A DNA stretch of 64,000 bases from sequence record PQ287642.1; one strand, 5' to 3'. Shown in pieces: positions 2,080 through 64,000 of the stretch. A program made the position numbers and the translations under genes. A model generated the notes under the pieces. That model had not been told where the DNA came from. It saw only the letters and a program-made list of their open reading frames with translations, and ran no database searches. Numbering within the stretch: the first letter of the stretch is position 1; every line of letters begins with the position of its first letter.

Positions 2080-2913
2080 ATGCATCCTTTGGCACAATCT
2101 TCTTTTGGTGTCCAAAATTCTCCGCAGAATCAGGTACGTATTGGCTGCACTATGTTAGCTGGTACGGACAAAAAAGGAATTCTTGCGCCGAATGCGGACG
2201 GTTATTATACTGTAGTTCTGGGTGCCTATGGTACACATAACTCTGCTGGTATGTTCTATGACGAAGCCAGTGGCGTTGCGATGTTTGATCCGAACTCTTC
2301 CCTGATGCGTCGCCTTAAGAAAGGTGTTCTCTTCATGGAGTTCAAACACCCTGAACCGTTTACAGACCTGATGATTGATGGTCGTGTTGTTCGTCAACCG
2401 ATGGATGATCGTCAATACCTGCAACGTATTCGTATGATCGACGATAACCGGGTTTGTGCACATATCCGTGCATTGACTATTGTTCCCGGTAAGAATGAAA
2501 ATGGTAAGACTGTTAAAATGGTCGTCGGTGAGGTTAAACCTTACGGTCCGTTTGGTCACATTTTTAAAGAGTCTTTGGATAACCCAAGTATCAATACCTA
2601 TTGTTCCGTTCGTTCTATCACACAGGACGACGTAATGCGTGGTATTAAGTATACACGGGAAATCTCCACCTGGGACTTCGTCGGTGAGGGTGGTATCTAT
2701 ATTGCTAACAAATATACCTCCCCTGCTTTGGAAAGTTTCTCCGATACCGAAGTTATCATCACACCTGCTACCCTTTGGAAGATGCAGGATGAAGCACAGA
2801 AGCGTGCTAATATCGGTATGGAATCTGATCCTAATCTAGACGTTACTGATCTAATTCAACAACTAGGTTGGTCGCGTAAGAAGCCGATTCGTGTACCTGC
2901 TTACATGCGATAA
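2080..2913 (+). CDS. Prohead (morphogenetic) serine protease, phiKZ gp175 / T4 gp21-like
   Basis: Motifs GVLFMEFKHP (catalytic His), IDDNRVCAHI, VKPYGP, CSVRS (nucleophile Ser) and STWDFV. PALES near the C-terminus fits an S/A/G-x-E self-cleavage site. Confidence 0.88.
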   Translation: MHPLAQSSFGVQNSPQNQVRIGCTMLAGTDKKGILAPNADGYYTVVLGAYGTHNSAGMFYDEASGVAMFDPNSSLMRRLKKGVLFMEFKHPEPFTDLMIDGRVVRQPMDDRQYLQRIRMIDDNRVCAHIRALTIVPGKNENGKTVKMVVGEVKPYGPFGHIFKESLDNPSINTYCSVRSITQDDVMRGIKYTREISTWDFVGEGGIYIANKYTSPALESFSDTEVIITPATLWKMQDEAQKRANIGMESDPNLDVTDLIQQLGWSRKKPIRVPAYMR

Positions 2914-51406: not shown

Positions 51407-54103
51407 TTAACGGAAGTCAGATGTATCTTCTTCGTCTTCCAGTTCATCCTGTTCAGCGGCCGATATTGGATCTTCAAGACCCTCAACTTGCGGCTCATCT
51501 TCGGGATTAGTTTCATCGGTATTTTCACTGGACGATTCATCCATGTCAGTGATATCACTATCACCAGCTGGAGTATCACCTGTACCACCATCAACACCAA
51601 GGTCCGTATCAGAACCATCTAAATCAGAGAAGGAGTCATCTCCAGACTCGTCATTATTGTCATTGTTCCAACTGTCACCACCACCTACATCATCAGCTCC
51701 ATCGATAGTAGATTTATACTTAGCCTCAAGACGCTTCTTAGCTTCTTGTTGATGCTTAGCATAGCTAAGGATAGCAGAGCCAACAGTTTCCTGTTGTACG
51801 TTCAGCCAATCCAGCAAGCTGAATGCAGGTTTATCACCATCCATTTCTGTAAGAACATTAAGTTCTGGAAGGATGTTGTGTGTTGCCATAAACTGACGTT
51901 TAAATACAGCTTTCAACTGAACCATTATCTGGTCAGACAGACCAGGTATGGAAGTAAACTCATCAGGGAAGAGTTCGCTGGTGATGTAGTTTTCCAAGCC
52001 CATAGTCAGAAGTCGATCATAGGCATCCATCGATTCTGCTTGACGTTCATGTTGAGTATTATCGGGTGCCGGTAGAGAAACCTCAATGGCAGTGATAAAC
52101 TCATCAACTACTTCTTCAACTGTCAACTGTTTAAGTTCAGGCGATGTCAACATGTCAACGTTGTCTTGAATGATTTTGTACATTTGATTACGCAGGATAG
52201 AACTGTGCGTTACAAATACACGAATGAATTTAGACAAGTGTTGACAGAACGCTTTCTGTTTCTCTTTAACACGTCGAGACATTACAAGGTCATTCTGTAC
52301 CACAGAAGTAGCGAAGTCTGGAGAAGACATCGGGTCTACTTTCTCAGGTGGTACACCCATACCTGAGATGTGCATACGGCGAAGGCGATCTTGTAGATCA
52401 GGATTCCCAGCATTAACGTTGGTATTGTAATCGTCGTATTGCACCTTTGTCTCTGCGTAGTCAGCACCATTGGTGTTGATTTCAAAGTCAAAGCCAGAAC
52501 GAATCAGATGGTCCATCGCTTGCGTAGGGTCAGGAGCAGCCAGAGGGAAACTACGGTGCGCCGATTCCATGATATTCGATTGGATATTACTGATTGTTTG
52601 TTCCGGATCTGTATCGTCGGGATCAAGAGTAATACTTACACGCTTACGACCAACAGCATTACGCATACCCCCAATAGCTTCTGCCATAAGAAGAGTAGAA
52701 CGCATGGTTGCGATAATCTTCGAGCGAGACAGAAGAGTTTCACCAATGCCATTTTCGTTATAGTCGAATGCAATATAAACTAAAAGCTCTGCCGGGATGA
52801 ATACCAGTTGAGTATGTTTAGCTTTCCAAGAACGATACAACATGATCCTCTGAATTTCTTCAGTTAGACCGATCTCAATTTCCTGATCATACATGCCGTT
52901 ACGAAGACGGTTGTTAAGATCATTCACAATAATCGCATTGTATGTTTGCTGGATTTCATCCACTTCGAAATCTTGTTTAGAAGTATTAGCACCCATCGCT
53001 TCCCGAGTAAGGCGTAGAACTTCAGAACTGTTGTCGTTATTCTTACCACCTTTCCAACCTGATTGAAGCTCACCATAAAAATCTCGGGTTGAGTCTTTGG
53101 AGAGCGGGTAACCATGTTGGTCGACCAACAAGAAATAGCCGATGTGTTCATGTGGGCGCCCCTGTACGAATACGGGTACAATGGATTCCATTGGAAGAGG
53201 GAGAGTCAATGGATGTCCAACCGAAGGCCGATTCATATACTTAGGAGCTGTGATTACCTGAGTATGTTCAGTGCCACCTAGTCTATTCTGATAAAGCTGT
53301 TCGATTTCAGCGTTACCGAATTTATGAACAGCGTTTTCCATCGAGATCTGATTACCGCGAAGCTTACGCGCAATATTCATTTCGCGTACACGTTGTGACA
53401 TCGATGGAACTTTGAGAATGTTAAAGTTATCCGTTACAGTGAGGAGCTTATCTCCACGAATACGGTTAGCTGTAGCATTATCATGATATCCCTCAAGAGA
53501 GATATTGTTCTTATCTGGGTGACCAAGGAAACCCAAGTTTTCATTAGTTGTATTCTGGACACGATCTCTAATAGAGGAGAAAGTTTCCATAGATACCTGG
53601 CGACGCCCATTAATAAGGTTATCTAGAACGTTTTCAGGGAGAACAGCTAAGATGGAAGCACCCTTACGGAACAAGCAATCCCGAAGGATCAGGTCCAGAC
53701 GCTCGTCAATCTTATAGTCTCGTTTAAAGTACGTTTCAACTGGCTCAAGCAAAAGCTTTGCAATCTCGCTATCAAAGATAGCTGGATCAATAGCGAATGT
53801 GAGGTCCGTATCCGAAAGTGCTTTAGGATCGATGATACTACCGACGTATACTGTTTCTACCAACTCTAGGTCTGGTAGCAACTGCATAATAGAGTCGGAG
53901 TCAACGATCTCTTGCGAAGTATCACGCGAAACCTTATCTAATGTGAAACGGTTTACGTTCACACGAGGCTTTGCTGCTTCGCTGCCAATTGCGTTCGGGT
54001 CCTTACGCAACAGGTTGAGGAGGGCGTTAGTCGGAGTTGCTTTCGATCCTAAACGGAGCGTCTGCAACTTTGGGTACGCTACCTCATTCGTTTGTCGAGC
54101 CAT
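51407..54103 (-). CDS. Portal protein (phiKZ gp129-like)
   Basis: Start revised to ATG 54103 (RBS GAGGAG). ~900 aa with propeptide sites VSME/ISLE/ISME, HPL...LPMESIVPV, GYFLLVD..GYP and LVYIAFDY..NGIG, and an acidic tail. Confidence 0.8.
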   Translation of the reverse strand: MARQTNEVAYPKLQTLRLGSKATPTNALLNLLRKDPNAIGSEAAKPRVNVNRFTLDKVSRDTSQEIVDSDSIMQLLPDLELVETVYVGSIIDPKALSDTDLTFAIDPAIFDSEIAKLLLEPVETYFKRDYKIDERLDLILRDCLFRKGASILAVLPENVLDNLINGRRQVSMETFSSIRDRVQNTTNENLGFLGHPDKNNISLEGYHDNATANRIRGDKLLTVTDNFNILKVPSMSQRVREMNIARKLRGNQISMENAVHKFGNAEIEQLYQNRLGGTEHTQVITAPKYMNRPSVGHPLTLPLPMESIVPVFVQGRPHEHIGYFLLVDQHGYPLSKDSTRDFYGELQSGWKGGKNNDNSSEVLRLTREAMGANTSKQDFEVDEIQQTYNAIIVNDLNNRLRNGMYDQEIEIGLTEEIQRIMLYRSWKAKHTQLVFIPAELLVYIAFDYNENGIGETLLSRSKIIATMRSTLLMAEAIGGMRNAVGRKRVSITLDPDDTDPEQTISNIQSNIMESAHRSFPLAAPDPTQAMDHLIRSGFDFEINTNGADYAETKVQYDDYNTNVNAGNPDLQDRLRRMHISGMGVPPEKVDPMSSPDFATSVVQNDLVMSRRVKEKQKAFCQHLSKFIRVFVTHSSILRNQMYKIIQDNVDMLTSPELKQLTVEEVVDEFITAIEVSLPAPDNTQHERQAESMDAYDRLLTMGLENYITSELFPDEFTSIPGLSDQIMVQLKAVFKRQFMATHNILPELNVLTEMDGDKPAFSLLDWLNVQQETVGSAILSYAKHQQEAKKRLEAKYKSTIDGADDVGGGDSWNNDNNDESGDDSFSDLDGSDTDLGVDGGTGDTPAGDSDITDMDESSSENTDETNPEDEPQVEGLEDPISAAEQDELEDEEDTSDFR

Positions 54104-54138
54104 TTGAAGCTCCTCGTTTAACAAGTGAGTAAATTACC

Positions 54139-56307
54139 ATGAGTAGCATGTATTTTGGAGTTTACCGTGACGATGTCATGAGACTTGCAAGATCTGTAGT
54201 AATCAAGTTTTCTGAAATAGCTAATCAGATTAATGAACGCCTAAAAGAGGTCGGACATGAAGCTGATCCAGCAAGACCGGAGACTTGGAAATATTATCAG
54301 AACCTTGCTGGTGAGTATCATGAAACAGATGTCATGATGACAGTTCGTTCCGCGGATACTCTTGAAATCATCGATTTCACAAAAGAAAATCTGGCGCTTC
54401 ACCGCGCTACTGCGCGAGAGTATATTCCGGGTAGCGTTTTATACAATAGCCTTGTAAGACAGTTCCCAGAACAAGCAGGTTTGATTACTGGAATCTTATA
54501 TCCAATTGACATCCAAACGGCAATAGATTCAAATGATGGGGATATTTTGTACTTTGATCCGAAGTATGTAGAAGATAATGAATACTCTTTCTTCCATCAA
54601 CTTCAGTCGTGGGTTAATGTATTTATTACTCGCTGGTATAACCCGCAGTTTAATTTAACTGACGATCTATACCTTGCAAACTTCCTTGGTCATTTATATA
54701 CCCGTTTACCTATTGCTATTATGCTTATTCGTCTACGGAATGCAAAGACTAACGAAGCGCATAGTTATCACGTTACGGAATACCTCGCATCTCACCAAGG
54801 GTTGGATGAGTTTATTCCCTATCTTTCTCTTGAGCAACGTTTATGGTTATATCGTAACATTGCGTTTCTGGAACGCAATGCGGGTAAGAAGGAAATTTGG
54901 CAACGTCTTGTTAAGAATATTCTTACACCTCGTGGCATTCCGTTGATCAGTTTTACTATTGAACAAAACAGTTCTAAAATGCCTGAGCAGCATCGACCAA
55001 CCGTCGATATGATAAAACACGACGTTAACTTCCCTGTCGTACAAGAAGGCCAAGAAACGACATCTGTGGCAGATGTTCTTGAAAGGGAAGATGACCTTGC
55101 AAGAGAGAACCCTCTTGTTCGTTTCGATGCTGAGCAAGATATCACCGATAAGATGAGTTCCGATCAATACAGTTGGCTTAGAACTAAAGTTCTTGACTCT
55201 GAGGTGATTGACCGGTCTAATAGTTCTGTACGTTCATTAATGAGCGTATTGCTGAACGAATGGTTACATTTGGCCTCAAGTGATAAATATAGGGCTTATG
55301 TTCAAATACCTAATCCTAAGACTGGCGAATTCATGACCATGACGGTTAAAGATGCCTTCATTGTGATGATGTATACCTATGCCAAGGCTCGTGATATTCC
55401 AACCGATAACATCCCTAGTCTTGTAGCATATGAAGTACTAAGAGATAAGTTACCTACCTTTGGTGAACTTCGACCAGCTGTTGATAAACGTATTATCCCT
55501 GACCGTCTAATTACTGCTGTGCAAGACATGGTTACTCCAATGGGTAACTATATCTCCACTGAGCAGTTCTATCTGGACTGTGTCCGTTTACACAAAGAAT
55601 ATCTCCTGCAATGGGAAATGTATTCTTTCCAGGAGCATCCTGCTGGTCGTGCTTATTGTGAGCAACTTGTAAAGTTCCATTACATGCATCGGATGTGTAA
55701 ACTGGCTCCACCAAATACCAAGTTTGAAGATTATTTCCGTAGAGCATCTTTCGATATCCTCAATCTAAATAAGACTGAGGCAGAACAGATGTGTATGGAT
55801 TGCATCAATATTGCAACTGGCTCCAACTTGGTTCGTGTTATTACACTAGGTGAAGTGCAGCGTGAATTGCTACGGTTGATGGGTCGTCTATCCAGTTATC
55901 CTCTTCAATATCTTCGTAACGTTAGCTTTACCGATTTCCATATTCTTGGTATGGTAATGCCACGTGTGGGGGATATTACAGTAGATGCCGCTGGTAACTA
56001 TATCTGCAACGTCGCTGTTCAAAATGTCAAAGCATATAGAACGTCGGCAGGGCATACGTATCGTGTTGTTGATGATTCTACTTCTCCATTCGTCGACTAC
56101 GTTTATAGTCAACAGGATATGTTCTGGATTAATCCATTTGTAGAAGTGAGAGACCTTAGTTACGCTGACGCCCATTATTACATTCCAGTAAATGGTGTTA
56201 ACGTAAGTAATGTTGTTATCGAAACTAATAATTCGCCGAATACAACTGGCGACTTGGATCAATATCAGAATTCCACTGACCCTAACTGGCCGAAACTTAA
56301 GGAGTAA
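54139..56307 (+). CDS. Baseplate wedge-like structural protein (phiKZ gp128-like)
   Basis: PETWKYYQNLAGEYH, YLASH.GL...I.YL..EQRLWLYRNI..LERNAGK and KTKVLDSEV. Divergent from the portal. Confidence 0.72.
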   Translation: MSSMYFGVYRDDVMRLARSVVIKFSEIANQINERLKEVGHEADPARPETWKYYQNLAGEYHETDVMMTVRSADTLEIIDFTKENLALHRATAREYIPGSVLYNSLVRQFPEQAGLITGILYPIDIQTAIDSNDGDILYFDPKYVEDNEYSFFHQLQSWVNVFITRWYNPQFNLTDDLYLANFLGHLYTRLPIAIMLIRLRNAKTNEAHSYHVTEYLASHQGLDEFIPYLSLEQRLWLYRNIAFLERNAGKKEIWQRLVKNILTPRGIPLISFTIEQNSSKMPEQHRPTVDMIKHDVNFPVVQEGQETTSVADVLEREDDLARENPLVRFDAEQDITDKMSSDQYSWLRTKVLDSEVIDRSNSSVRSLMSVLLNEWLHLASSDKYRAYVQIPNPKTGEFMTMTVKDAFIVMMYTYAKARDIPTDNIPSLVAYEVLRDKLPTFGELRPAVDKRIIPDRLITAVQDMVTPMGNYISTEQFYLDCVRLHKEYLLQWEMYSFQEHPAGRAYCEQLVKFHYMHRMCKLAPPNTKFEDYFRRASFDILNLNKTEAEQMCMDCINIATGSNLVRVITLGEVQRELLRLMGRLSSYPLQYLRNVSFTDFHILGMVMPRVGDITVDAAGNYICNVAVQNVKAYRTSAGHTYRVVDDSTSPFVDYVYSQQDMFWINPFVEVRDLSYADAHYYIPVNGVNVSNVVIETNNSPNTTGDLDQYQNSTDPNWPKLKE

Positions 56308-56309
56308 TC

Positions 56310-57188
56310 ATGTACATTACGAGAGACTATTTACAGTCTACTCCTTGGACATCTATAATCGACATGATCAACGATGCTTGTTTTACCCAATTGTTTCCGG
56401 GTAGTACTAAGCTTGAACAGTTCGAATCACTGGGTGGTACCAAGACTCGTATTGTTATAAGTGTAAATCGCAGTAAGGCTTCCGGTAACTTACTACCGGA
56501 AGTCGGACTCGATACTTATACGTACGATCGATTAGATTTGACGACATTTTTTAGACAAACCCAAGTGCTTGATTTATCGAATGTGGATACTCCATATTCC
56601 AGTTTAAAGGTTGTCGAAAAATTATCCGAGTTAAATAACATTGTTTTTGATGTAGATGATTTCGAACATACCGAGTATAATGTATTCAACCAAGAATTCA
56701 TTCTCCATGCGAATAAAAAGTCTCTTCGTTTTGTAGGTTTTCTTCGGGTTCGTTTGATTAATACGCTACGAAAGGAATTATCTACTTTCAGTAAAGTTGA
56801 ATTCCCTGACGTAGGTAAACCTGACAATGTTAAAGCTAATGATCTTTCACTGATCAATGGTACTTATTACATCACTGGATATGACTTTAGTGAACATAGA
56901 GAGTATCTTCGTCATCTAACAAAGGCTGGTACCCATCCAGATCCTAAGAAGATGGCCGCTATTCTCGCTGAGGTGACGAATAAACCTTGGACAGCATCAA
57001 AGACACCAGCTTCTCACAACATCGCTTATACTGAAGAAATAGGGGTTCTAAAGTACAGGATCATTTATAATGGCATTGTACTACCTCGATTTAGTGGGCG
57101 TACTGATATACAAAATGTACTTGTTATCGAGTTACATAAAACTTTATGTCAGGATGTCGTTGGCGAAATTAGAATTCATTATAACTAA
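56310..57188 (+). CDS. Virion structural protein (gp127-like), YxRL-motif family
   Basis: TKTRIVI...TYTYDRLDL and RFVG. Coupled to the upstream gene. Confidence 0.65.
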   Translation: MYITRDYLQSTPWTSIIDMINDACFTQLFPGSTKLEQFESLGGTKTRIVISVNRSKASGNLLPEVGLDTYTYDRLDLTTFFRQTQVLDLSNVDTPYSSLKVVEKLSELNNIVFDVDDFEHTEYNVFNQEFILHANKKSLRFVGFLRVRLINTLRKELSTFSKVEFPDVGKPDNVKANDLSLINGTYYITGYDFSEHREYLRHLTKAGTHPDPKKMAAILAEVTNKPWTASKTPASHNIAYTEEIGVLKYRIIYNGIVLPRFSGRTDIQNVLVIELHKTLCQDVVGEIRIHYN

Positions 57189-57197
57189 GGAGTAGAG

Positions 57198-57626
57198 ATG
57201 CACGTTAAAAACATGAAATCTAAACTACTCCAACAGTTTAGTATTCAGAACAAGTTGGATCCAGCTATTCGTCCTGAGGATGTTATTTGGACTGGTATTG
57301 AAATATGGTTGCAGAACGGTAATAACTCAAGAGCTACTATTCAGGCTGTTGGGACGAGCAAGTATTTTAAAGGACAGAAACAAATATTCTTTAATCGATA
57401 TCGAATTGAAGAAGCTCTCAATGGGGTTGTTATTCCAGGGAAGAGAATTGATTATTCAACTATCCATGATGTTATTAAAGTACTCCGTGATAAAGTGACT
57501 GTACCCGTCGATACTGATGAATTCCTAGATGGTCCTCTAACTGGTAATACGGTTATTTTAAAACCCACTACTCGTTCTCTAGCCTACATTCCAACTTCAC
57601 AAGTTGAATTAAGTTTCGAGAAATAA
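57198..57626 (+). CDS. Virion structural protein (gp126-like), YxRL-motif family
   Basis: NSRATIQA..YFKGQKQIFFNRYRI and SLAY. RBS AAGGAG. Confidence 0.65.
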   Translation: MHVKNMKSKLLQQFSIQNKLDPAIRPEDVIWTGIEIWLQNGNNSRATIQAVGTSKYFKGQKQIFFNRYRIEEALNGVVIPGKRIDYSTIHDVIKVLRDKVTVPVDTDEFLDGPLTGNTVILKPTTRSLAYIPTSQVELSFEK

Positions 57627-57639
57627 AAAAAAAATAAAG

Positions 57640-57673
57640 CATATCGCCCTCTCCCGAAGGAGAGGGCTTTATG
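57640..57673. terminator. CATA-stem-loop-TATG element between convergent genes
   Basis: CATA-TC-GCCCTCTCC-CGAA-GGAGAGGGC-TT-TATG, with an A10 run at 57625-57634. Confidence 0.75.
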
Positions 57674-57680
57674 TTGTTAC

Positions 57681-57953
57681 TCATCGCCGTTCAATCGACC
57701 ATACTCTATCGATCTCTTTCATCTCGATCATTCGTAGAGTAGCCCCAAATACAACGACAATACACAACAGCATTGTAATTGAAGTAAGGGACACCTTAAT
57801 GAAATCACGTTTGCCAATCTTTTCAAATGGCACGTAGATGAGATACCTAAACCGATGATTTAGATAAAGAGCAAAGAAAGCAGCGAGAACAGCTATCAGG
57901 AACCACATGTGAAATTCCTGAGTCCACGTCAATACATAACCGAAGACAGACAT
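57681..57953 (-). CDS. Small two-TM membrane protein
   Basis: WFLIAVLAAFFALYL and ITMLLCIVVVFGATL hydrophobic helices. Abuts the upstream stop. Confidence 0.65.
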   Translation of the reverse strand: MSVFGYVLTWTQEFHMWFLIAVLAAFFALYLNHRFRYLIYVPFEKIGKRDFIKVSLTSITMLLCIVVVFGATLRMIEMKEIDRVWSIERR

Positions 57954-58658
57954 TTACACCAGCGCCACGAAAGTGCCATCTTTAAAGCCAACTTTACGTT
58001 TAGCTTCATCGTACCATACATCAACACCCATGCGAGCCAGGCCTTCTACGACATATTTATCATAGTTACCTTTACCACGCATGATGGACTTCAGTTGACG
58101 AGTCAGGATGGTGTGGTTAGTGGAAAGGAACATACCTGGTACGTCAAGGTCTTTAACACGGAGATTACGCGGTAGCAGCGACTCCATGGAAATGTTCAGA
58201 AGTTCCATGCGACGGAGATCTTCACGCAGAGCCCGAACATTATAAACCATGGCCAGTCTGATGTCACCACCTTTACGGAGATGTTCCTCGGTCAGATGTG
58301 GCAGAGTTGCGGTTGGATCAACAATCACTGCTCTTTCACCAAAACTTTTCACGACTGGATCGAGGTAAGGGTTATGTACAACATATTCCCCATTAACCCA
58401 ACGATACAAATCCAAAGTAGAAGTTACTTTGTAAGTTGCCTCAGGATCACCCCGCAAAGGAAGATCATCGACAGTAAGGACATCAATAGACATACTCTCT
58501 CCTTTGCCTTTAGGGAGTTCAGTTGGACTATAACTGCTAGCGTCCATTATGGTTTCAAAGAAATCCACATCATGTTCTACATCACGAATTGCCTTACCGA
58601 ACACTTCACGATGAGACGGAATGAACATGGATTTTACAGCGTTGAAAACCTGATTCAT
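57954..58658 (-). CDS. Hypothetical protein (probably early)
   Basis: 234-aa ORF with RBS AAAGGA, downstream of a TATATCAC early-promoter variant. Confidence 0.65.
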   Translation of the reverse strand: MNQVFNAVKSMFIPSHREVFGKAIRDVEHDVDFFETIMDASSYSPTELPKGKGESMSIDVLTVDDLPLRGDPEATYKVTSTLDLYRWVNGEYVVHNPYLDPVVKSFGERAVIVDPTATLPHLTEEHLRKGGDIRLAMVYNVRALREDLRRMELLNISMESLLPRNLRVKDLDVPGMFLSTNHTILTRQLKSIMRGKGNYDKYVVEGLARMGVDVWYDEAKRKVGFKDGTFVALV

Positions 58659-58688
58659 TTTGCAATTTCCTTTTGATAGAGTGTATTT

Positions 58689-58707
58689 ATATCACCTCTG
58701 TGATATA
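58689..58707 (-). promoter_or_regulatory. Early-promoter variant TATATCAC embedded in a 7-bp inverted repeat
   Basis: ATATCAC-CTCT-GTGATAT(A). GTGATATA reads TATATCAC on -, one mismatch from TATATTAC. Confidence 0.45.
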
Positions 58708-58711
58708 GGCG

Positions 58712-59251
58712 TTATTTATCTTTAAATACAGGATTATCGAAATCATCTTCATAGAGGATATCGATACCTACAATATCAACCACCTGCTCATTGTCATTCA
58801 GTTGATATCTAAACCCAACTGTAAGAGGAAGCAGATTATAAAGGGCATTCAGATCACGGGCCAAGGGACCTGCTGCGGTAATATCCAAAATCAATACAAG
58901 TGGTGTATTGATGGTGTTACTATATTGAATGGACCAACTATCAATAGTAGCACATACACGATTTGCATCTACTACTAGAGAACGAAGAATAATATTCTCA
59001 AGTGAAGATACTTTTACTTGGGGATGACCTAATTCGATTCCTGTCAACAGGAGTTCATTCTTCTTAACAAAAGAAGAATTCTCCCACAGGTGAAGTTGAC
59101 TCAAACCAAATGCATTTTCAACGATTGCTTCTACTCGTTCTTCACCGAGTACGGCAAGATCCCGGCGAATACCAGCGACCATACGTTGGCGCATTTCATC
59201 GAAGGAAACGGTTACCCGATATTTGGCATTCGGTAGTTTTTCGAATTTCAT
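58712..59251 (-). CDS. Degenerate prohead-protease paralogue (His kept, nucleophile Ser->Gly)
   Basis: GIELGHP, VDANRVCATI, AAGPL, VGFRY and VDIVGIDIL align in order with EFKHP, IDDNRVCAHI, PYGPF, CSVRS and EISTWDFV of 2080-2913. Confidence 0.7.
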   Translation of the reverse strand: MKFEKLPNAKYRVTVSFDEMRQRMVAGIRRDLAVLGEERVEAIVENAFGLSQLHLWENSSFVKKNELLLTGIELGHPQVKVSSLENIILRSLVVDANRVCATIDSWSIQYSNTINTPLVLILDITAAGPLARDLNALYNLLPLTVGFRYQLNDNEQVVDIVGIDILYEDDFDNPVFKDK

Positions 59252-59270
59252 TACTCTGCTCCTAGAGGGA

Positions 59271-59294
59271 CATATAGCCCCTCTAATGAGGGGC
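59271..59294 (-). terminator. Stem-loop with CATA arm
   Basis: CATA-TA-GCCCCTC-TAAT-GAGGGGC between the two protease paralogues. Confidence 0.6.
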
Positions 59295-59300
59295 TAGTTA

Positions 59301-59711
59301 TCAATCTGACAATATGTCGAATGTGATAATTTCTTTCAATACACCAACCGCATTCTTGAGACCGCGTACGCCAAGTCGCATTGGAATATCGTTCTTGATC
59401 ATCGCATGCATCCGATCATGATTGGGTCCGAATGGACGGATGTATACGTTGAAGCCAATGAGTTTAGCTTTCTCATGTACAGGGTCGATACCGAGTACTA
59501 AAGCTGCACCATTATTGCAGTTGATGGATGTTGCTCGTTTGTAGTCTGTTTCAATGTTACCTGTCATCTTAGGATGACCAAACTCACAAGCGATCACGCC
59601 GGAACGAATATCATTACTAAACTTACTGACTTCATAATTCACATGCATGTATTTTGGAAGTCGATCTAAAGCAATGAATTCTACGCCTACTCCATTTTCA
59701 AATGATAACAT
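59301..59711 (-). CDS. Second degenerate prohead-protease paralogue (His kept, Ser->Gly)
   Basis: SGVIACEFGHP, IRPFGP, LGVRG and KEIITFDIL align with KGVLFMEFKHP, VKPYGP, CSVRS and REISTWDFV of 2080-2913. Confidence 0.72.
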   Translation of the reverse strand: MLSFENGVGVEFIALDRLPKYMHVNYEVSKFSNDIRSGVIACEFGHPKMTGNIETDYKRATSINCNNGAALVLGIDPVHEKAKLIGFNVYIRPFGPNHDRMHAMIKNDIPMRLGVRGLKNAVGVLKEIITFDILSD

Positions 59712-59730
59712 CTCATTTTCCTATGAAAAG

Positions 59731-59755
59731 GTCCCTCCGAAGAGGGACACTTATG
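59731..59755 (-). terminator. UUCG stem-loop with TATG arm ending the nvRNAP operon
   Basis: GTCCCTC-CGAA-GAGGGAC-ACT-TATG, directly after the stop at 59757. Confidence 0.62.
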
Positions 59756-59756
59756 T

Positions 59757-61820
59757 TTACTTCAGGCGCTTCAACAGAACCGCTTTCTCGGTCAGACGTC
59801 CACGAATAACTTCCATGTAAACGCCATCAACGGTGATCAACCGCATACGGACATTAGCAAGGCCAGATGCCGTAGCACGAGTGATCATACCTTTCAGCAC
59901 TTCACGAACAGTCGGGTGAGTTCCCTCAGAAACAAGGACGGCTTTCTCGGTCAGAACGTTCAGAGTGGCCATCTGTTCAAGAGTCCAACCTACCTGGAAG
60001 TTAACGTACTGATCGGCAACACCACGGATATCATCAACCTCAGCCATCGTTACCGAACGAGCGATAATTTGAGCTGCGCACGCTTTGATGATTTGCAGTA
60101 CTTGCACACCTTTCTTGTTACTGATGTAATCCAGCAGATCACCGATGTCATGTGCGAAATCACTGGTGGTGATATTTTGGATCGACAGGCTATCTGCCAT
60201 GAAGTCATTGATGGAATCGGTCAGACGATCATTCAGGAAACGGAAATAACGGATGCTCAGTTGACCGCGATTTACCATTTCTTTCAGTTCGGTAGCAATC
60301 CCGATCAGATCGGTATAGTTACGCAGATTACTCAGCTGTTCGAAGGTTTCATCGCTAACATCCATGTGATAGATGCTCATCGATTTATATTCGTGTGCAG
60401 GCAGAGTGATCGACTGCGATTCTTCGTCGTCACCAATGTTCAGGAGTTCCCGAACAGCAGCACGTGCTTCAGATTCGTTTTCGAGATCGTTAGCACCCAT
60501 GAACATCTTATTATCAAGAATGATCGGACGCATTGCCGCCGCTTCACCGAGTTCATTATCCTTGACGAGGCTTTCTACTTCTTCAATACCCATTGCATCT
60601 CCACCGATAGTAGAGATGGGAGTGGTGGAAGCATATACCACACCGTTAGGACGATATTCACGACGACGCAGGTCATCATTCAGTTCGTGTTTCAGGTATT
60701 CCATTTGCGGGTTCCATTCAATGAATTTCTCTTTTACTACACCATCGGGGAACTTGACGAAGAAACGGCAATAGTGTTCCGGATCAACCAGAGGACTGTA
60801 CGGATCTTCATCACCAACGGTCCGTTCCCAATCAACCAGTTGTGCCGGTTTAATCAGAATTCCCCCAGGGTTATGAATCTCATCGTAAGGACGAGCGATG
60901 TTTACACGGAAACCAGTAGGTTGGTAATACATCGGATCGATCATCACCTGAGATACGTCGATCGGAACAGGGAGATCAGTATCTTCCACAACGGGTGTAT
61001 TTTGCACTTGCGGTTGTTGACTGTACATCGGTTGTTGCTCCTGTTGATGGGAGTAGCCACCGTAAATATCAGTACTGATCTCTTCCTTCGGCATCAGGGG
61101 AGCAGATGCAGCCGGAGTATCATCGTAATACGAACTGGTGGTGCTCGATACCGTGTTTGGCGATGCGCCATAAGTACCAGCGGGTTGAGAGAAAGTAGCT
61201 TGGGTGGTTGTTGCGAACTGTCCCATGTTACCTGGGTTAATGGGAGGCAAATTACCTGCCATCTGGATACCTTGCGGTTGACCCATCATTCCCATTTGCT
61301 GTTGTTGGGGACGATAGTTACCAGATTTGTACGCTTGAATCTCTTGGAGGATCTGCTGATACATGGCTTGAGCAGTTTGCAGACCTTGGAACATATGTTG
61401 CGGAACTGCACCCATTTGCACGAGAGCAGGATACGATGCAACGCATTGACCAAGGAACGCTTCATACATACGCTGTGCAGCTTTCGGCGGTGCATCCGTC
61501 TGACTGTAGTTCTTGCAGACACACAGGAACTCAACGAAATCCACCAGGTGCTGACACCATTGTTGGAAGATCTGGTTTTGGAACCAGTTCGACGACAGCA
61601 GGTTGTACGCGAAAATATGAAGGTTGCTTTTTCCAACCGACGATTGCGCAAGCCCACGGAACAGACCAATAGCCATGAGCACCAGCTGTTGGTTATTCAT
61701 CAGGTTCTGGCTGAGTTGGAGTTGAGGTACCCGGTCATTGCCATGAGGCAGATTACCATTAAAGGTACTCTGATCGACTTGTTGGCAGGATACCGGGAGT
61801 TGAGCTTGTTGGTTGTACAT
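59757..61820 (-). CDS. Large conserved protein co-transcribed with the nvRNAP subunit; Gln-rich low-complexity segment
   Basis: 687-aa ORF with RBS AGGAAA, 23 nt after the nvRNAP gene. Residues ~167-275 are Q/G/S/T/Y/M-rich. Confidence 0.75.
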   Translation of the reverse strand: MYNQQAQLPVSCQQVDQSTFNGNLPHGNDRVPQLQLSQNLMNNQQLVLMAIGLFRGLAQSSVGKSNLHIFAYNLLSSNWFQNQIFQQWCQHLVDFVEFLCVCKNYSQTDAPPKAAQRMYEAFLGQCVASYPALVQMGAVPQHMFQGLQTAQAMYQQILQEIQAYKSGNYRPQQQQMGMMGQPQGIQMAGNLPPINPGNMGQFATTTQATFSQPAGTYGASPNTVSSTTSSYYDDTPAASAPLMPKEEISTDIYGGYSHQQEQQPMYSQQPQVQNTPVVEDTDLPVPIDVSQVMIDPMYYQPTGFRVNIARPYDEIHNPGGILIKPAQLVDWERTVGDEDPYSPLVDPEHYCRFFVKFPDGVVKEKFIEWNPQMEYLKHELNDDLRRREYRPNGVVYASTTPISTIGGDAMGIEEVESLVKDNELGEAAAMRPIILDNKMFMGANDLENESEARAAVRELLNIGDDEESQSITLPAHEYKSMSIYHMDVSDETFEQLSNLRNYTDLIGIATELKEMVNRGQLSIRYFRFLNDRLTDSINDFMADSLSIQNITTSDFAHDIGDLLDYISNKKGVQVLQIIKACAAQIIARSVTMAEVDDIRGVADQYVNFQVGWTLEQMATLNVLTEKAVLVSEGTHPTVREVLKGMITRATASGLANVRMRLITVDGVYMEVIRGRLTEKAVLLKRLK

Positions 61821-61843
61821 CTGACTTTTCCTATTTGAGAAGT

Positions 61844-63469
61844 TTAAGAGACAAAACGTTGTTGAGCTTTGTCAATAAGTTCACGATCTTCTTCACGTCG
61901 TTCAACCAATCCGTCGTATCTAACTCCGACGAAGAGGTTTAGTCGGCCACGACCATCCGGGTTGTTTTTCGGTTGGTTTTTGTATTGGCCCACCTCCGCG
62001 ATCGAAGCGTGGATTAAACGAGAGCTATCACCGATTAGTGATTTGTTGTGTGCTTTAGAAGTCTTCGCGCGATCCTGCGGTACAAGGATCGAGGTTACTT
62101 TAATAACCTTGCTATCACCAGGAGACGACAGTGTGTCGAGCTCACCGTGTTCACTGGTAAGTTTCTTAATGCACGTATTGAGTTTGAATGAACGTTTCAG
62201 GGCATCGTTGATTTCCTGTCCAGTCCACTCTTTATCTTTACGACCTTGGAACGTATACGCAAACATGGAGACAGCATAGTTAAACTCTGCCATCACATAC
62301 CTAAGAATACTCAGGCGTTTGTCGTACATACTAGTTTCATCAATGTCAGTGGCATACAGATGGTGTGCCATATCTGTCATGATCGCATATAGCAGTTCCC
62401 AGATGGTATTGACTTTCACTCCAACTGAACGAAGTTCTTCAATAGTCATCTCATCCAGAGAGTTGTTGAAGCTATCCAGGTGAGATTCAATGTTCTCAGC
62501 AATTTTACCTTGGTGCTCGAAGTCACCAAAGATCATCAGACCGAGAATGATTCGCCATAGCTGTTTATTATCCATGTAGCTCGGCTCGTAAAACCGGCTT
62601 GGGAATGCATCTACGACGTACCAGAACCCTGCAACGAGTCGACGGACAAAGTCTGTCTCCTTGTCTTTGGGTAGAACCAGAACCATATCTCCAGTTGGAT
62701 GACGACGTTTCAGAACCGCAGATTCATAAACGTTCCATTGATCACGCGGATACTGGGACTCAGGAAAGTCTTTCAGATATCCAATTTGAATATCTACTCC
62801 AGCCCAACGCTTGAACGTTTCAACGACACCAAACTCACAGAAGAAGTAATGTGCAAGACACGACTCGATGTGCTGCCGGTTATCCAGATCACGTTTAGTG
62901 CGCTTAGACATTTCGTTGTGAATCTGAGACCAGATCACATACATCACTTCACGCTGACCATTACACATGTAGTGGTGGTCAACTTGCTTAAACGTCAGTT
63001 TGGCACGCCGGAATGGAATGAAGATACTGCCATTCAATACCGAGAAGCCAACATCAGTCAACACCGGAGAGATCGAATAGGTTGCACCATTGAGCGTACA
63101 GATACCACCATCACGAACATATGGCAATAGTACCCTTCGTGGGAACATCATTTCGCCTTTATAGCTAGTGATCAGCTCGATCATGTACGTATTACTCTCG
63201 GCGATATTTGCTACACGCTTAGAGCCATACTCACGGGTTATCTCTTCGAAATGAACTTCGGGTTTACACAGACGGTTTCCATGATACTTGAAGTCAGCAG
63301 GGAATAGCGCCGAGTTGATTTCAAACAACTTATCAACATATGCACGAGTTGCGTTCATGCCTGTTTCTGGGTTGATCTCCATCATGTGCTTTACTGCAAG
63401 CCCATTGGCTAAATCTTTATTTAGCTTGGGTATGACACCATCAATCCTACTGATTACGTACGGGTCCAT
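61844..63469 (-). CDS. rpoB: Non-virion RNA polymerase beta subunit, N-terminal part (phiKZ gp123-like)
   Basis: Strong match to recalled gp123: SPVLTDVGFSVL..SIFIPFRR.KLTFKQ.DHHYMCNGQR..MYVIWSQIHNEM and HASIAEVGQYKNQPKNNPDGRGRLN. Confidence 0.93.
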   Translation of the reverse strand: MDPYVISRIDGVIPKLNKDLANGLAVKHMMEINPETGMNATRAYVDKLFEINSALFPADFKYHGNRLCKPEVHFEEITREYGSKRVANIAESNTYMIELITSYKGEMMFPRRVLLPYVRDGGICTLNGATYSISPVLTDVGFSVLNGSIFIPFRRAKLTFKQVDHHYMCNGQREVMYVIWSQIHNEMSKRTKRDLDNRQHIESCLAHYFFCEFGVVETFKRWAGVDIQIGYLKDFPESQYPRDQWNVYESAVLKRRHPTGDMVLVLPKDKETDFVRRLVAGFWYVVDAFPSRFYEPSYMDNKQLWRIILGLMIFGDFEHQGKIAENIESHLDSFNNSLDEMTIEELRSVGVKVNTIWELLYAIMTDMAHHLYATDIDETSMYDKRLSILRYVMAEFNYAVSMFAYTFQGRKDKEWTGQEINDALKRSFKLNTCIKKLTSEHGELDTLSSPGDSKVIKVTSILVPQDRAKTSKAHNKSLIGDSSRLIHASIAEVGQYKNQPKNNPDGRGRLNLFVGVRYDGLVERREEDRELIDKAQQRFVS

Positions 63470-63477
63470 CACCCCTC

Positions 63478-64000
63478 CTATCGCTTTCGGAATATCTTTT
63501 CGAGCAATGCATCTGCCTTGGCTACTTCAGCTAAGAAGTCCACGACAGTTCCAACTGATATATCCCTAAACAGGATGATATCTCTCACAGCCAAAGGTTC
63601 GAGTTCTTCGTCGTATAGATGTCGATGGAACATATCAAAACAATCCATACGTCTCTGAGCATCTTCCTTTGACATTCCTTTTGTACTTTCCTTTACAGCT
63701 TCTCTCCATTCACGTAAACTGGAATAGATGCCATACTTCTTAAAGTCTCCAGGTTTGATAACAATCGCTTTCGCATTATCCCGTCGTGCTGCAAATGTCA
63801 CATTACCCCTTAGGTTAATATGAATACCAACAGGCATATCTGGCATGAAGACAGGCTTTACCTCAAGTAGATCGCTGCCGAATGGCATAAATACACTTTC
63901 GGTTATACGCTCATCGTCTACGAAATAAGCAACAGTTGTAGTAGTAGTCCAGATGATATCTTCCTGACGGTAGAGTTCATCGTTCTTCGAGAAGAAACAA
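63478..64000 (-). CDS. C-terminal part of a gene truncated by the window end
   Basis: The frame of the 63478-63888 ORF stays open to the window end (CFFSKNDELYRQEDIIWTTTTTVAYF...), so 63888 is not the true start. Confidence 0.7.
   Translation of the reverse strand, partial: CFFSKNDELYRQEDIIWTTTTTVAYFVDDERITESVFMPFGSDLLEVKPVFMPDMPVGIHINLRGNVTFAARRDNAKAIVIKPGDFKKYGIYSSLREWREAVKESTKGMSKEDAQRRMDCFDMFHRHLYDEELEPLAVRDIILFRDISVGTVVDFLAEVAKADALLEKIFRKR

What the first reader, a model, noticed from the sequence alone, without database searches (positions are those of the whole stretch)
58712..59711. Tandem pair of pseudo-proteases: prohead-protease paralogues with the nucleophile Ser replaced by Gly
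Both ORFs align motif by motif with the real prohead protease at 2080-2913. His motif: EFKHP vs EFGHP vs ELGHP. DDNRVCAHI vs DANRVCATI. PYGP vs PFGP vs AAGP. Nucleophile strand: CSVRS vs LGVRG vs VGFRY. Terminal strand: STWDFV vs ITFDIL vs VGIDIL. Both keep the His but carry Gly where the presumed catalytic Ser sits, and both lack the C-terminal extension with the self-cleavage site. They lie 56 kb from the protease, behind the nvRNAP operon, and are separated by their own hairpin. Inference: the fold has been repurposed, for example as a substrate-binding regulator that delays S/A/G-x-E head maturation, a scaffold for ejected proteins, or a decoy for host defences that sense or cleave phage proteases. 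I know of no described function for such a pair.
Basis: partly seen in the sequence, partly recalled or inferred. Interest (0 to 1): 0.8.

Follow-up and report, generated by a model that had tools for sequence, protein, structure and literature searches.

The report
Two inactive copies of head protease
Two small neighbouring genes of a giant Pseudomonas phage encode well-folded, selectively maintained copies of the capsid-maturation protease that have lost the cutting residue; such copies were first noticed in 2017, their job is still unknown, and they behave like fast-changing accessory binding proteins rather than core assembly parts.

Summary
The window is Pseudomonas phage HHBS36_1, a PhiPA3-like, nucleus-forming jumbo phage. 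ORF-A (59301-59711, 136 aa) and ORF-B (58712-59251, 179 aa) align motif by motif with the S80 prohead protease at 2080-2913. Both keep His and Asp and carry Gly at the nucleophile Ser. Both lack the C-terminal propeptide. AlphaFold models (pLDDT 90.5 and 88.7) match predicted prohead proteases.

They are not decaying: dN/dS is 0.05-0.09.

The idea is not new. Ali et al. 2017 described this paralogue class, naming PhiPA3 gp143, the orthologue of ORF-A. PHROG 7478 already labels such proteins.

New here:
- Among 108 short relatives only 5 keep the full triad, while the Glu, Pro, Arg and Asp of the active-site frame are nearly invariant.
- phiKZ has none.
- The pair sits in a 2.2-kb recombinant patch between otherwise identical phages.
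- It diverges far faster than its neighbours, while the real protease stays 100% identical.
- In other phages the dead domain is fused to nucleotide-metabolism enzymes.

Best reading: non-catalytic binding proteins, probably competing with the protease outside the capsid. The mechanism is untested. Interest is moderate.

The parts
59301..59711 (-). ORF-A, 136 aa. A-type pseudo-protease and orthologue of PhiPA3 gp143. Motif residues E43, H46, P47, G114 (Ser site), R116, D132.
58712..59251 (-). ORF-B, 179 aa. B-type pseudo-protease and orthologue of PhiPA3 gp142. Same core as A plus a two-helix insert (residues ~17-47). Motif residues E73, H76, P77, G146 (Ser site), R148, D164.
59275..59296 (-). 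GC-rich hairpin between ORF-A and ORF-B: 9-bp stem, 4-nt loop, -17.4 kcal/mol, with no T-run after it.
59728..59752 (-). Terminator-like hairpin between the gp124-like gene and ORF-A (-14.5 kcal/mol, followed by CTTTTC).
58688..58707 (-). AT-rich hairpin after ORF-B (-7.8 kcal/mol).
2080..2913 (+). The real prohead protease (Pfam Peptidase_S80, 4.8e-97). Triad H90, S176, D199. 59% identical to phiKZ gp175.
59757..61820 (-). Upstream neighbour, 687 aa. Orthologue of phiKZ gp124 (3e-135), function unknown.
57954..58658 (-). Downstream neighbour, 234 aa. Orthologue of phiKZ gp125 (3.9e-14), function unknown.
61844..63469 (-). Non-virion RNA polymerase subunit (phiKZ gp123-like), at the head of the gene string.
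57900..60150 (.). Recombinant patch. Identity to phage PS119XW falls from 99-100% to 71-90%, lowest over ORF-B and ORF-A.

Best explanation
Shown: ORF-A and ORF-B are pseudoenzymes. They are compact, non-catalytic derivatives of the S80/T4-gp21-type prohead-protease fold. They keep the frame of the active-site region (Glu-x-x-x-Pro, Gly-Pro, the Arg two residues after the nucleophile position, and the triad Asp). They have lost the nucleophile Ser and both terminal regions of the enzyme, including the C-terminal propeptide that Ali et al. infer carries the protease into the prohead. They are kept by purifying selection, are accessory to the phage family, and are exchanged as a cassette.

Inferred: they stay in the cytoplasm and act by binding rather than cutting. 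The most likely mechanism is competition with the real protease outside the capsid. This could work by occupying ...x-Glu cleavage segments or by joining mixed oligomers with the enzyme. Either way, phage proteins, or host proteins that report protease activity, would not be cleaved at the wrong time or place.

The identity layer is about 0.85 likely. The binding-competitor mechanism is about 0.4 likely.
For: Homology and fold.

Loss of catalysis with a preserved frame:
- 48 of 53 long relatives have His-Ser-Asp.
- Only 5 of 108 short relatives do, and 60 of the 108 have neither His nor Ser.
- In the short class Glu is 108/108, Pro 107/108, Arg 104/108 and Asp 102 of 102 aligned.
- T4 gp21 shares the same E-x-x-H-P, G-P, S-x-R and D motifs.

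Selection: dN/dS is 0.05-0.07 for A and 0.07-0.09 for B.

Probably not packaged: they have no C-terminal extension, and 201phi2-1 gp205, gp206 and gp210 are not flagged as virion proteins although their neighbours are.

Accessory and exchangeable:
- phiKZ has none.
- A 2.2-kb divergent patch sits in otherwise identical genomes.
- A and B are 27-51% and 29-36% identical where the adjacent polymerase subunit is 89-95%.
- The gene order is inverted in PhiPA3.

Precedent that phages restrain their own prohead protease: the T4 gene inh is annotated as an inhibitor of the protease.

The promoter nearest the orthologous polymerase-subunit gene of 201phi2-1 is of the late type (PMC11512511). It was not shown to drive the pseudo-protease genes.
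Against: - No binding partner was identified, and no multimer prediction could be run.
- The real protease is 100% identical in HHBS36_1 and PS119XW, yet their A and B alleles differ by 16% and 23%. A tightly co-adapted partner of the protease is therefore unlikely.
- phiKZ matures its heads with a 59%-identical protease and no such protein.
- In other phages the dead domain is fused to a DHH phosphoesterase, a dNMP-kinase-like domain and a polymerase-like fragment. That fits a general interaction or oligomerisation module better than a protease competitor.
- Foldseek against the PDB gave nothing significant; the best E-value was 0.17.
- The invariant Arg and Asp may simply be structural.
Confidence: 0.4

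Rival explanations
1. They are a general oligomerisation or protein-docking module that no longer has anything to do with proteolysis. The protease fold is reused as a scaffold that assembles or localises other proteins. It occurs standalone here and fused to enzymes elsewhere.
For: Real internal ORFs in long contigs fuse the dead domain to the C-terminus of other proteins:
- a DHH phosphoesterase (P0068, 462 aa, seen in two independent assemblies; P0099);
- a dNMP-kinase/thymidylate-synthase-like domain (P0127);
- an RNA-polymerase-like fragment (P0142).

Several copies lie beside polymerase-subunit or nucleotide-metabolism genes. There is no co-variation with the real protease.
Against: - The residues that frame the catalytic site (Glu, Pro, Arg at Ser+2, Asp) are almost invariant across about 100 very divergent short members. 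That is more than a mere scaffold needs.
- His46 is fixed throughout the A clade.
- No oligomer could be modelled here.
Confidence: 0.25
2. They are still active enzymes that use another nucleophile (a nearby Cys or Thr, or water activated by the retained His-Asp pair).
For: - Both keep His and Asp.
- The A clade keeps His46 in all five cluster representatives, and the A-type protein of contig L032 also reads E-Y-T-H-P.
- Cys42, four residues before the His, is shared by the A-type proteins read directly.
- ORF-B has Thr144 two residues before Gly146.
- One B-type relative (P0033, 156 aa) has a complete His-Ser-Asp triad.
Against: - Across the short family His and Ser vary freely and independently: 60 of 108 members have neither.
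- Thr144 is not conserved in PhiPA3 gp142.
- No model coordinates were available to place a substitute nucleophile.
Confidence: 0.07
3. They are decaying remnants of a displaced or duplicated protease gene with no present function, the 'protease remnant' suggestion of Ali et al. 2017.
For: They are truncated at both ends relative to the enzyme and lack the nucleophile. They are absent from phiKZ. Ali et al. raised this reading.
Against: - dN/dS is 0.05-0.09, as low as in neighbouring genes.
- The reading frames are intact in 10 phage records and 2 metagenomic contigs. ORF-A is 136 aa in every one; B-type proteins are 179 aa in eight phage records and one contig, 169 aa in PhiPA3 and 156 aa in L032.
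- The fold predictions are confident.
- The family has more than 100 clusters at 50% identity.
Confidence: 0.03
4. They are structural parts of the prohead core or scaffold that are packaged with the protease.
For: BFVD matches include entries named 'prohead core scaffold protein'. The SPAsTU homologue is labelled 'virion structural protein'. The genes lie downstream of the major capsid protein gene.
Against: - 201phi2-1 gp206 and gp210 are not flagged as detected in virions, while their neighbours are.
- There is no C-terminal targeting region.
- phiKZ lacks them.
- T4 scaffold protein gp68 shows no sequence relation.
- The extreme divergence next to conserved structural genes is atypical for core parts.
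Confidence: 0.05

Closest known systems
Diverged prohead-protease paralogues of giant phages: SPN3US gp117, 201phi2-1 gp206, PhiPA3 gp143 (Ali et al. 2017, Front Microbiol 8:2251). They are captured as PHROG 7478.
   Same: - ORF-A is the syntenic orthologue of PhiPA3 gp143 (43% identity, same 136 aa).
- Both ORFs hit PHROG 7478.
- They are short, lack the protease C-terminus and are not the assigned protease.
   Different: - The B-type protein (PhiPA3 gp142) was not reported there.
- SPN3US gp117 was said to keep Ser and Asp but not His, whereas A and B keep His and Asp but not Ser.
- That paper proposed a gene remnant. Here purifying selection, family-wide loss of catalytic residues, fusions and cassette exchange are shown.
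phiKZ gp175 / MEROPS S80 prohead protease (Pfam PF20034), and T4 gp21 (S77)
   Same: - Same fold by structure prediction.
- Shared E-x-x-H-P, G-P, x-x-R and D motifs.
   Different: - No nucleophile Ser.
- About half the length.
- No N-terminal ~45-70 residues and no C-terminal propeptide.
- Score below the Pfam cut-off.
- Probably not packaged.
Pseudo-protease regulators of active paralogues, such as cFLIP for caspase-8 (from general knowledge)
   Same: A catalytically dead paralogue encoded alongside an active protease. Regulation by mixed oligomers or substrate competition is conceivable.
   Different: No interaction with the active enzyme has been shown. There is no co-variation with it. 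The resemblance is an analogy only.
T4 Inh, annotated as a minor head protein and inhibitor of the prohead protease
   Same: It is a phage-encoded restraint on the phage's own prohead protease, which is the role proposed here.
   Different: It showed no significant match to the family profiles. Inh is a head protein, whereas A and B are probably not.

Membership tests
Peptidase S80 (Pfam PF20034, phiKZ gp175 type) | Sequence score above the curated Pfam gathering cut-off (23.4 bits) | tested here: not met
   ORF-A scores 20.8 bits and ORF-B 16.1 bits. The real protease at 2080-2913 scores 324 bits.
Peptidase S80 (Pfam PF20034, phiKZ gp175 type) | Catalytic triad His-Ser-Asp (SPN3US gp245 H77/S153/D178; window protease H90/S176/D199) | tested here: not met
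   The Ser position is Gly114 in A and Gly146 in B. His and Asp are present.
Peptidase S80 (Pfam PF20034, phiKZ gp175 type) | Prohead-protease (herpesvirus/T4 gp21-like) fold | tested here: met
   AF2 pLDDT is 90.5 and 88.7. Foldseek against BFVD hits S80, S77 and U9 prohead proteases at E 1e-5 to 1e-6 with TM (query) 0.55-0.69. The PDB search was negative.
Peptidase S80 (Pfam PF20034, phiKZ gp175 type) | C-terminal propeptide removed by self-cleavage and needed for incorporation into the prohead | tested here: not met
   Both proteins end 4-15 residues after the Asp strand. The real proteases continue for about 70 more residues.
Short prohead-protease paralogues (PHROG 7478; Ali et al. 2017) | Profile match to PHROG 7478 | tested here: met
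   ORF-B 1.7e-10, ORF-A 1.2e-4.
Short prohead-protease paralogues (PHROG 7478; Ali et al. 2017) | Orthology and synteny with a published member (PhiPA3 gp143) | tested here: met
   ORF-A and gp143 are 43% identical (2e-24) and both 136 aa. Both lie between the gp124 and gp125 orthologues. ORF-B and gp142 are 30% identical (9e-12).
Pseudoenzyme (pseudo-protease) | Homologous to an active enzyme, missing essential catalytic residue(s), yet maintained by purifying selection | tested here: met
   Homology. Ser replaced by Gly. dN/dS 0.05-0.09. Family-wide, only 5 of 108 short members keep the triad.
Pseudoenzyme (pseudo-protease) | Demonstrated absence of catalytic activity | not testable with these tools
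   This needs purified protein and a substrate assay.
Prohead core / virion component | Detected in proheads or virions | not testable with these tools
   Only indirect evidence: the 201phi2-1 relatives gp206 and gp210 lack the 'identified as virion protein by mass spectrometry' note that their neighbours carry.

The most novel reading that the evidence does not exclude
The dead protease copies are counter-defence decoys. They keep the substrate cleft of the prohead protease. With it they could bind the protease-sensitive activation loops of host sensors, such as the CBASS CD-NTases that fire when a prohead protease cuts them (Hobbs & Kranzusch 2026). Alternatively they could cap the free protease in the cytoplasm. 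Either way, late protease activity would no longer trip abortive-infection immunity. This would explain why they are accessory, hypervariable, swapped as a cassette and uncoupled from the sequence of the real protease.
Probability: 0.1. Interest if true: 0.85.

Novelty: new member of a known kind. Interest (0 to 1): 0.5.

Why it matters
Prohead proteases are essential in these phages; phiKZ gp175 is essential by TnSeq. They have just been shown to be the signal that many CBASS systems sense. A widespread, selectively maintained family of dead copies of that enzyme is therefore a natural place to look for two things. One is a phage's own brake on untimely proteolysis. The other is a shield against protease-sensing immunity. 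With more than 100 sequence clusters, often two copies per genome and sometimes fusion to other enzymes, the family is large enough to study.

It also has a practical side. Annotation pipelines label these genes 'head maturation protease', which is wrong for function.

If they turn out to be only interaction modules, the case remains a clean example of enzyme-to-binder conversion in viruses.

Tried and rejected
- **Sequence search of the PDB.** With the protease, A and B there were no meaningful hits. Foldseek of the A model against the PDB gave a best E-value of 0.17, only weak Hcp/tube-like noise, and no T4 gp21 entry among the 50 matches listed.
- **IMG/VR scans for close relatives.** Nothing found. 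The word-indexed protein search with ORF-A alone gave only 2 hits.
- **T4 gp68 as a precedent.** T4 gp68 is a 141-aa scaffold core protein encoded next to gp21. I tested whether it is an analogous short paralogue. It has no sequence relation to the family profiles or to S77, so I dropped the lead. Structure was not tested.
- **Segmental duplication.** I asked whether 'RNA polymerase subunit + protease' was duplicated as a block, mirroring the virion polymerase/gp175 neighbourhood. There is no detectable paralogy between gp124/gp125-like proteins and gp173-gp179, so the idea is unsupported.
- **Shared neighbours with SPN3US-like phages.** None found. The HslU-like ATPase beside the SPAsTU copies has no counterpart here.
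- **PADLOC defence models.** No hit for A, B or their neighbours.
- **Charge complementarity of A and B as a hint of a heterodimer.** Not informative: pI 7.8 and 4.9.
- **Maximum-likelihood tree of the family.** True proteases cluster together, and A- and B-types fall in separate deep lineages. Branch supports were not examined and the alignment is short, so I use this only qualitatively.
Full report
**What the window is.** Window bases 57000-62000, the part searched, are 100% identical to Pseudomonas phage HHBS36_1 (PQ287642.1, 302 kb; window base 1 corresponds to record base 124001). This is a PhiPA3-related, nucleus-forming jumbo phage of P. aeruginosa. On the minus strand the gene order is:
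- major head protein;
- two hypothetical genes;
- the non-virion RNA polymerase subunit (phiKZ gp123-like, 61844-63469);
- a 687-aa orthologue of phiKZ gp124 (59757-61820);
- ORF-A (59301-59711, 136 aa);
- ORF-B (58712-59251, 179 aa);
- a 234-aa orthologue of phiKZ gp125 (57954-58658).

The real prohead protease is at 2080-2913. It scores 4.8e-97 against Pfam Peptidase_S80 and is 59% identical to phiKZ gp175.

| Protein | Glu | His | Pro | Ser site | Arg (Ser+2) | Asp |
|---|---|---|---|---|---|---|
| Window protease | – | H90 | – | S176 | R178 | D199 |
| ORF-A | E43 | H46 | P47 | G114 | R116 | D132 |
| ORF-B | E73 | H76 | P77 | G146 | R148 | D164 |

The window protease positions come, matching H77/S153/D178 published for SPN3US gp245.

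Single-sequence statistics are weak. Pairwise BLASTP gives E-values of 0.005-0.03, and Pfam S80 scores are below the gathering cut-off. Profile statistics are strong. PHROG 7478 scores 1.7e-10 and 1.2e-4. A profile of short proteins alone finds the window's protease at 2.3e-23 and phiKZ gp175 at 1.8e-22 in whole-genome six-frame scans.

AlphaFold2 gives confident models: A has pLDDT 90.5 and B 88.7, both with pTM 0.83. They share the order of strands and helices. B has an extra two-helix insert near its N-terminus.

Foldseek against BFVD matches two groups of proteins at E 1e-5 to 1e-9:
- The same short proteins in Phabio, 201phi2-1, Psa21, RAY, Yersinia fHe-Yen9-04 and Klebsiella Miami and Eowyn.
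- Proteins annotated as prohead proteases: an S80 member of Aeromonas phage D6, 'prohead core protein serine protease' and 'Peptidase U9, T4 prohead protease'.

The PDB search found nothing significant.

Both proteins stop just after the Asp strand and so lack the ~70-residue C-terminal propeptide. They also lack the first ~45-70 residues of the enzyme.

The hairpin between them (59275-59296, -17.4 kcal/mol, z = -4.55) and those flanking the pair are real.

**They are not decaying genes.** Against the orthologues in phages HPP-Temi and PS119XW, dN/dS is 0.05-0.07 for A and 0.07-0.09 for B. That is within the range of the neighbouring genes, 0.00-0.11. Both frames are intact in all ten phage records that carry them and in two metagenomic contigs with the same five-gene arrangement.

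**Family survey.** A profile search of 1.84 billion representative proteins found 283 clusters at E <= 1e-3. I aligned the 150 best of these, together with the proteins found by the earlier searches (166 in all), to a joint profile.

| Class | His-Ser-Asp triad | Other counts |
|---|---|---|
| Long (235-300 aa), n = 53 | 48 of 53 | – |
| Short (<= 205 aa), n = 108 | 5 of 108 (three of the five cluster with true proteases and look like fragments) | His 26/108; Ser 27/108 (Gly 37, Ala 17, Lys 11); neither His nor Ser 60/108 |

In the short class the frame residues are almost invariant: Glu 108/108, Pro 107/108, Arg (Ser+2) 104/108, and Asp 102 of 102 aligned. T4 gp21 carries the same E-x-x-H-P, G-P, S-x-R and D motifs.

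This is the signature of a pseudoenzyme family that keeps the architecture around the former active site. 'His-Gly-Asp', as in A and B, is the commonest combination (13 clusters). The A clade has it in all five representatives. The B clade varies: His/Gly here, Thr/Asp in PhiPA3 gp142, Ser/Ser in P0036, and a complete His/Ser/Asp in P0033.

**Distribution.**
- The whole HHBS36_1 genome has only three members: the protease, A and B.
- phiKZ has only gp175. The phiKZ-like phage SL2 has nothing between its gp124 and gp125 orthologues.
- Phabio has gp193 at the same locus, plus a second tandem pair, gp341-gp342, beside PRPP synthetase and NAMPT genes.
- 201phi2-1 has gp206 and gp210.
- SPN3US-like SPAsTU has two copies two genes apart.

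The family is thus accessory and variable in copy number.

**Behaviour of the locus.** Relative to phiKZ, the pair is inserted exactly between the gp124 and gp125 orthologues. PhiPA3 carries the two genes in the opposite order, B-type gp142 and then A-type gp143. Reciprocal best matches are unambiguous.

HHBS36_1 and PS119XW are 99-100% identical across 54000-57900 and 60150-63900. They are only 71-90% identical across 57900-60150, with the minimum over ORF-B and ORF-A. In that patch dS is 0.8-1.6, against <= 0.08 in the flanks. This is a recombinational replacement of the cassette. The real protease is 100% identical between the same two phages.

The pair also diverges far faster than its neighbours in more distant relatives:

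| Contig | Polymerase subunit | gp124-like | gp125-like | A | B |
|---|---|---|---|---|---|
| L032 | 89% | 61% | 50% | 27% | 36% |
| L033 | 95% | 73% | 56% | 51% | 29% |

**Fusions.** Several relatives carry the dead domain at the C-terminus of another protein:
- P0068 (462 aa) has a DHH phosphoesterase in front of it. It is an internal gene of a 110-kb contig next to dUTPase and SNF2 helicase genes, and it was found in two assemblies.
- P0099 has the same architecture.
- P0127 has a dNMP-kinase/thymidylate-synthase-like N-terminus and lies just upstream of an RNA polymerase subunit gene.
- P0142 has an RNA-polymerase-like fragment and lies downstream of chimallin and a polymerase subunit gene.

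All of these fused domains lack His, Ser or both.

**What was already known.** Ali et al. 2017 (PMC5694885) found by PSI-BLAST, SAM and HHpred that SPN3US gp117 is a very diverged match to the prohead protease. They named 201phi2-1 gp206 and PhiPA3 gp143 as further examples and noted two copies in some Erwinia phages. They called a protease paralogue in a phage genome unprecedented and suggested a possible gene remnant.

I found no later functional work. A broad jumbo-phage comparative study does not mention such copies. PHROG 7478 encodes the class, so pipelines annotate ORF-B, and both genes in HPP-Temi, as 'head maturation protease'.

The finding is therefore a new member, plus a second unreported B-type partner, of a described but uncharacterised class.

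**How it most likely works.** What is shown:
- the protease fold;
- no nucleophile Ser;
- no propeptide;
- purifying selection;
- accessory, exchangeable and fast-diverging behaviour.

What is inferred is that these are cytoplasmic proteins that bind rather than cut. I favour competition with the real protease outside the capsid, by occupying cleavage segments or by joining mixed oligomers. Three points support this:
- The frame of the active-site region is what selection preserves.
- Phages are known to restrain this enzyme; the T4 gene inh is annotated as a protease inhibitor.
- The promoter nearest the orthologous polymerase-subunit gene of 201phi2-1 is of the late type. It has not been shown to drive the pseudo-protease genes.

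Three points weigh against a dedicated partner of the protease:
- phiKZ has no copy.
- The pair does not co-vary with the enzyme.
- The fusions to unrelated enzymes keep a plain docking or oligomerisation role well alive.

The most novel reading left open is an immune decoy. T4 gp21-type proteases have been shown to activate CBASS by cutting a CD-NTase activation loop. CBASS does act on phiKZ-like phages. A hypervariable accessory cassette is what counter-defence genes usually look like. Nothing here tests that idea.

**Verdict.** Novelty is a new member of a known kind. Interest is moderate (0.5), raised by the family-wide pseudoenzyme signature, the cassette behaviour and the new link between prohead proteases and immunity.

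Noticed in passing
window 57623-57679 (hairpin 57646-57667): This intergenic stretch holds a strong two-way terminator-like hairpin. It is 94.8% identical to an intergenic stretch of PhiPA3 (185919-185976) that lies between gp204 and gp205, the real protease gene. That is a different locus in a phage whose coding DNA no longer matches at the DNA level.
   Followed up: no
window 57900-60150: A sharp recombinant patch. Identity to phage PS119XW is 99-100% on both sides and 71-90% inside. The patch covers the gp125-like gene, ORF-B, ORF-A and the 3' end of the gp124-like gene. The PS119XW alleles resemble those of HPP-Temi.
   Followed up: yes
L003 4936-7042 (PhiPA3 genes 140 and 141): The gp124 orthologue is 687-721 aa in related phages. 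In the PhiPA3 record the same 2.1 kb is annotated as a 261-aa gene 140 plus an overlapping opposite-strand gene 141. This is probably a frameshift or a mis-annotation in that record.
   Followed up: no
L021 6001-7389; L024 1155-2090; L025 3699-4490: Metagenomic jumbo-phage genes fuse the dead protease domain to a DHH phosphoesterase, a dNMP-kinase-like domain or an RNA-polymerase-like fragment. Two of them lie next to RNA polymerase subunit genes.
   Followed up: partly
L032 4916-5386 (protein P0033): A 156-aa B-type relative sits in the same five-gene arrangement and still has a complete His-Ser-Asp triad. Some short members may therefore be active mini-proteases, or the loss in the B lineage may be recent.
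   Followed up: partly
L009 2516-3288 (Phabio gp341-gp342): A second tandem pair of short protease-like genes in phage Phabio lies next to PRPP synthetase and nicotinamide phosphoribosyltransferase genes, far from the capsid locus.
   Followed up: partly
window 59757-61820 (gp124-like protein, residues ~170-260): This conserved protein of unknown function (PHROG 15010) has a long Gln/Met/Gly/Pro-rich low-complexity region in its N-terminal third.
   Followed up: no
window 57681-57953: A small 90-aa ORF with two hydrophobic stretches, probably a membrane protein, follows the gp125-like gene. Its counterpart in PS119XW is annotated as only 75 aa.
   Followed up: no
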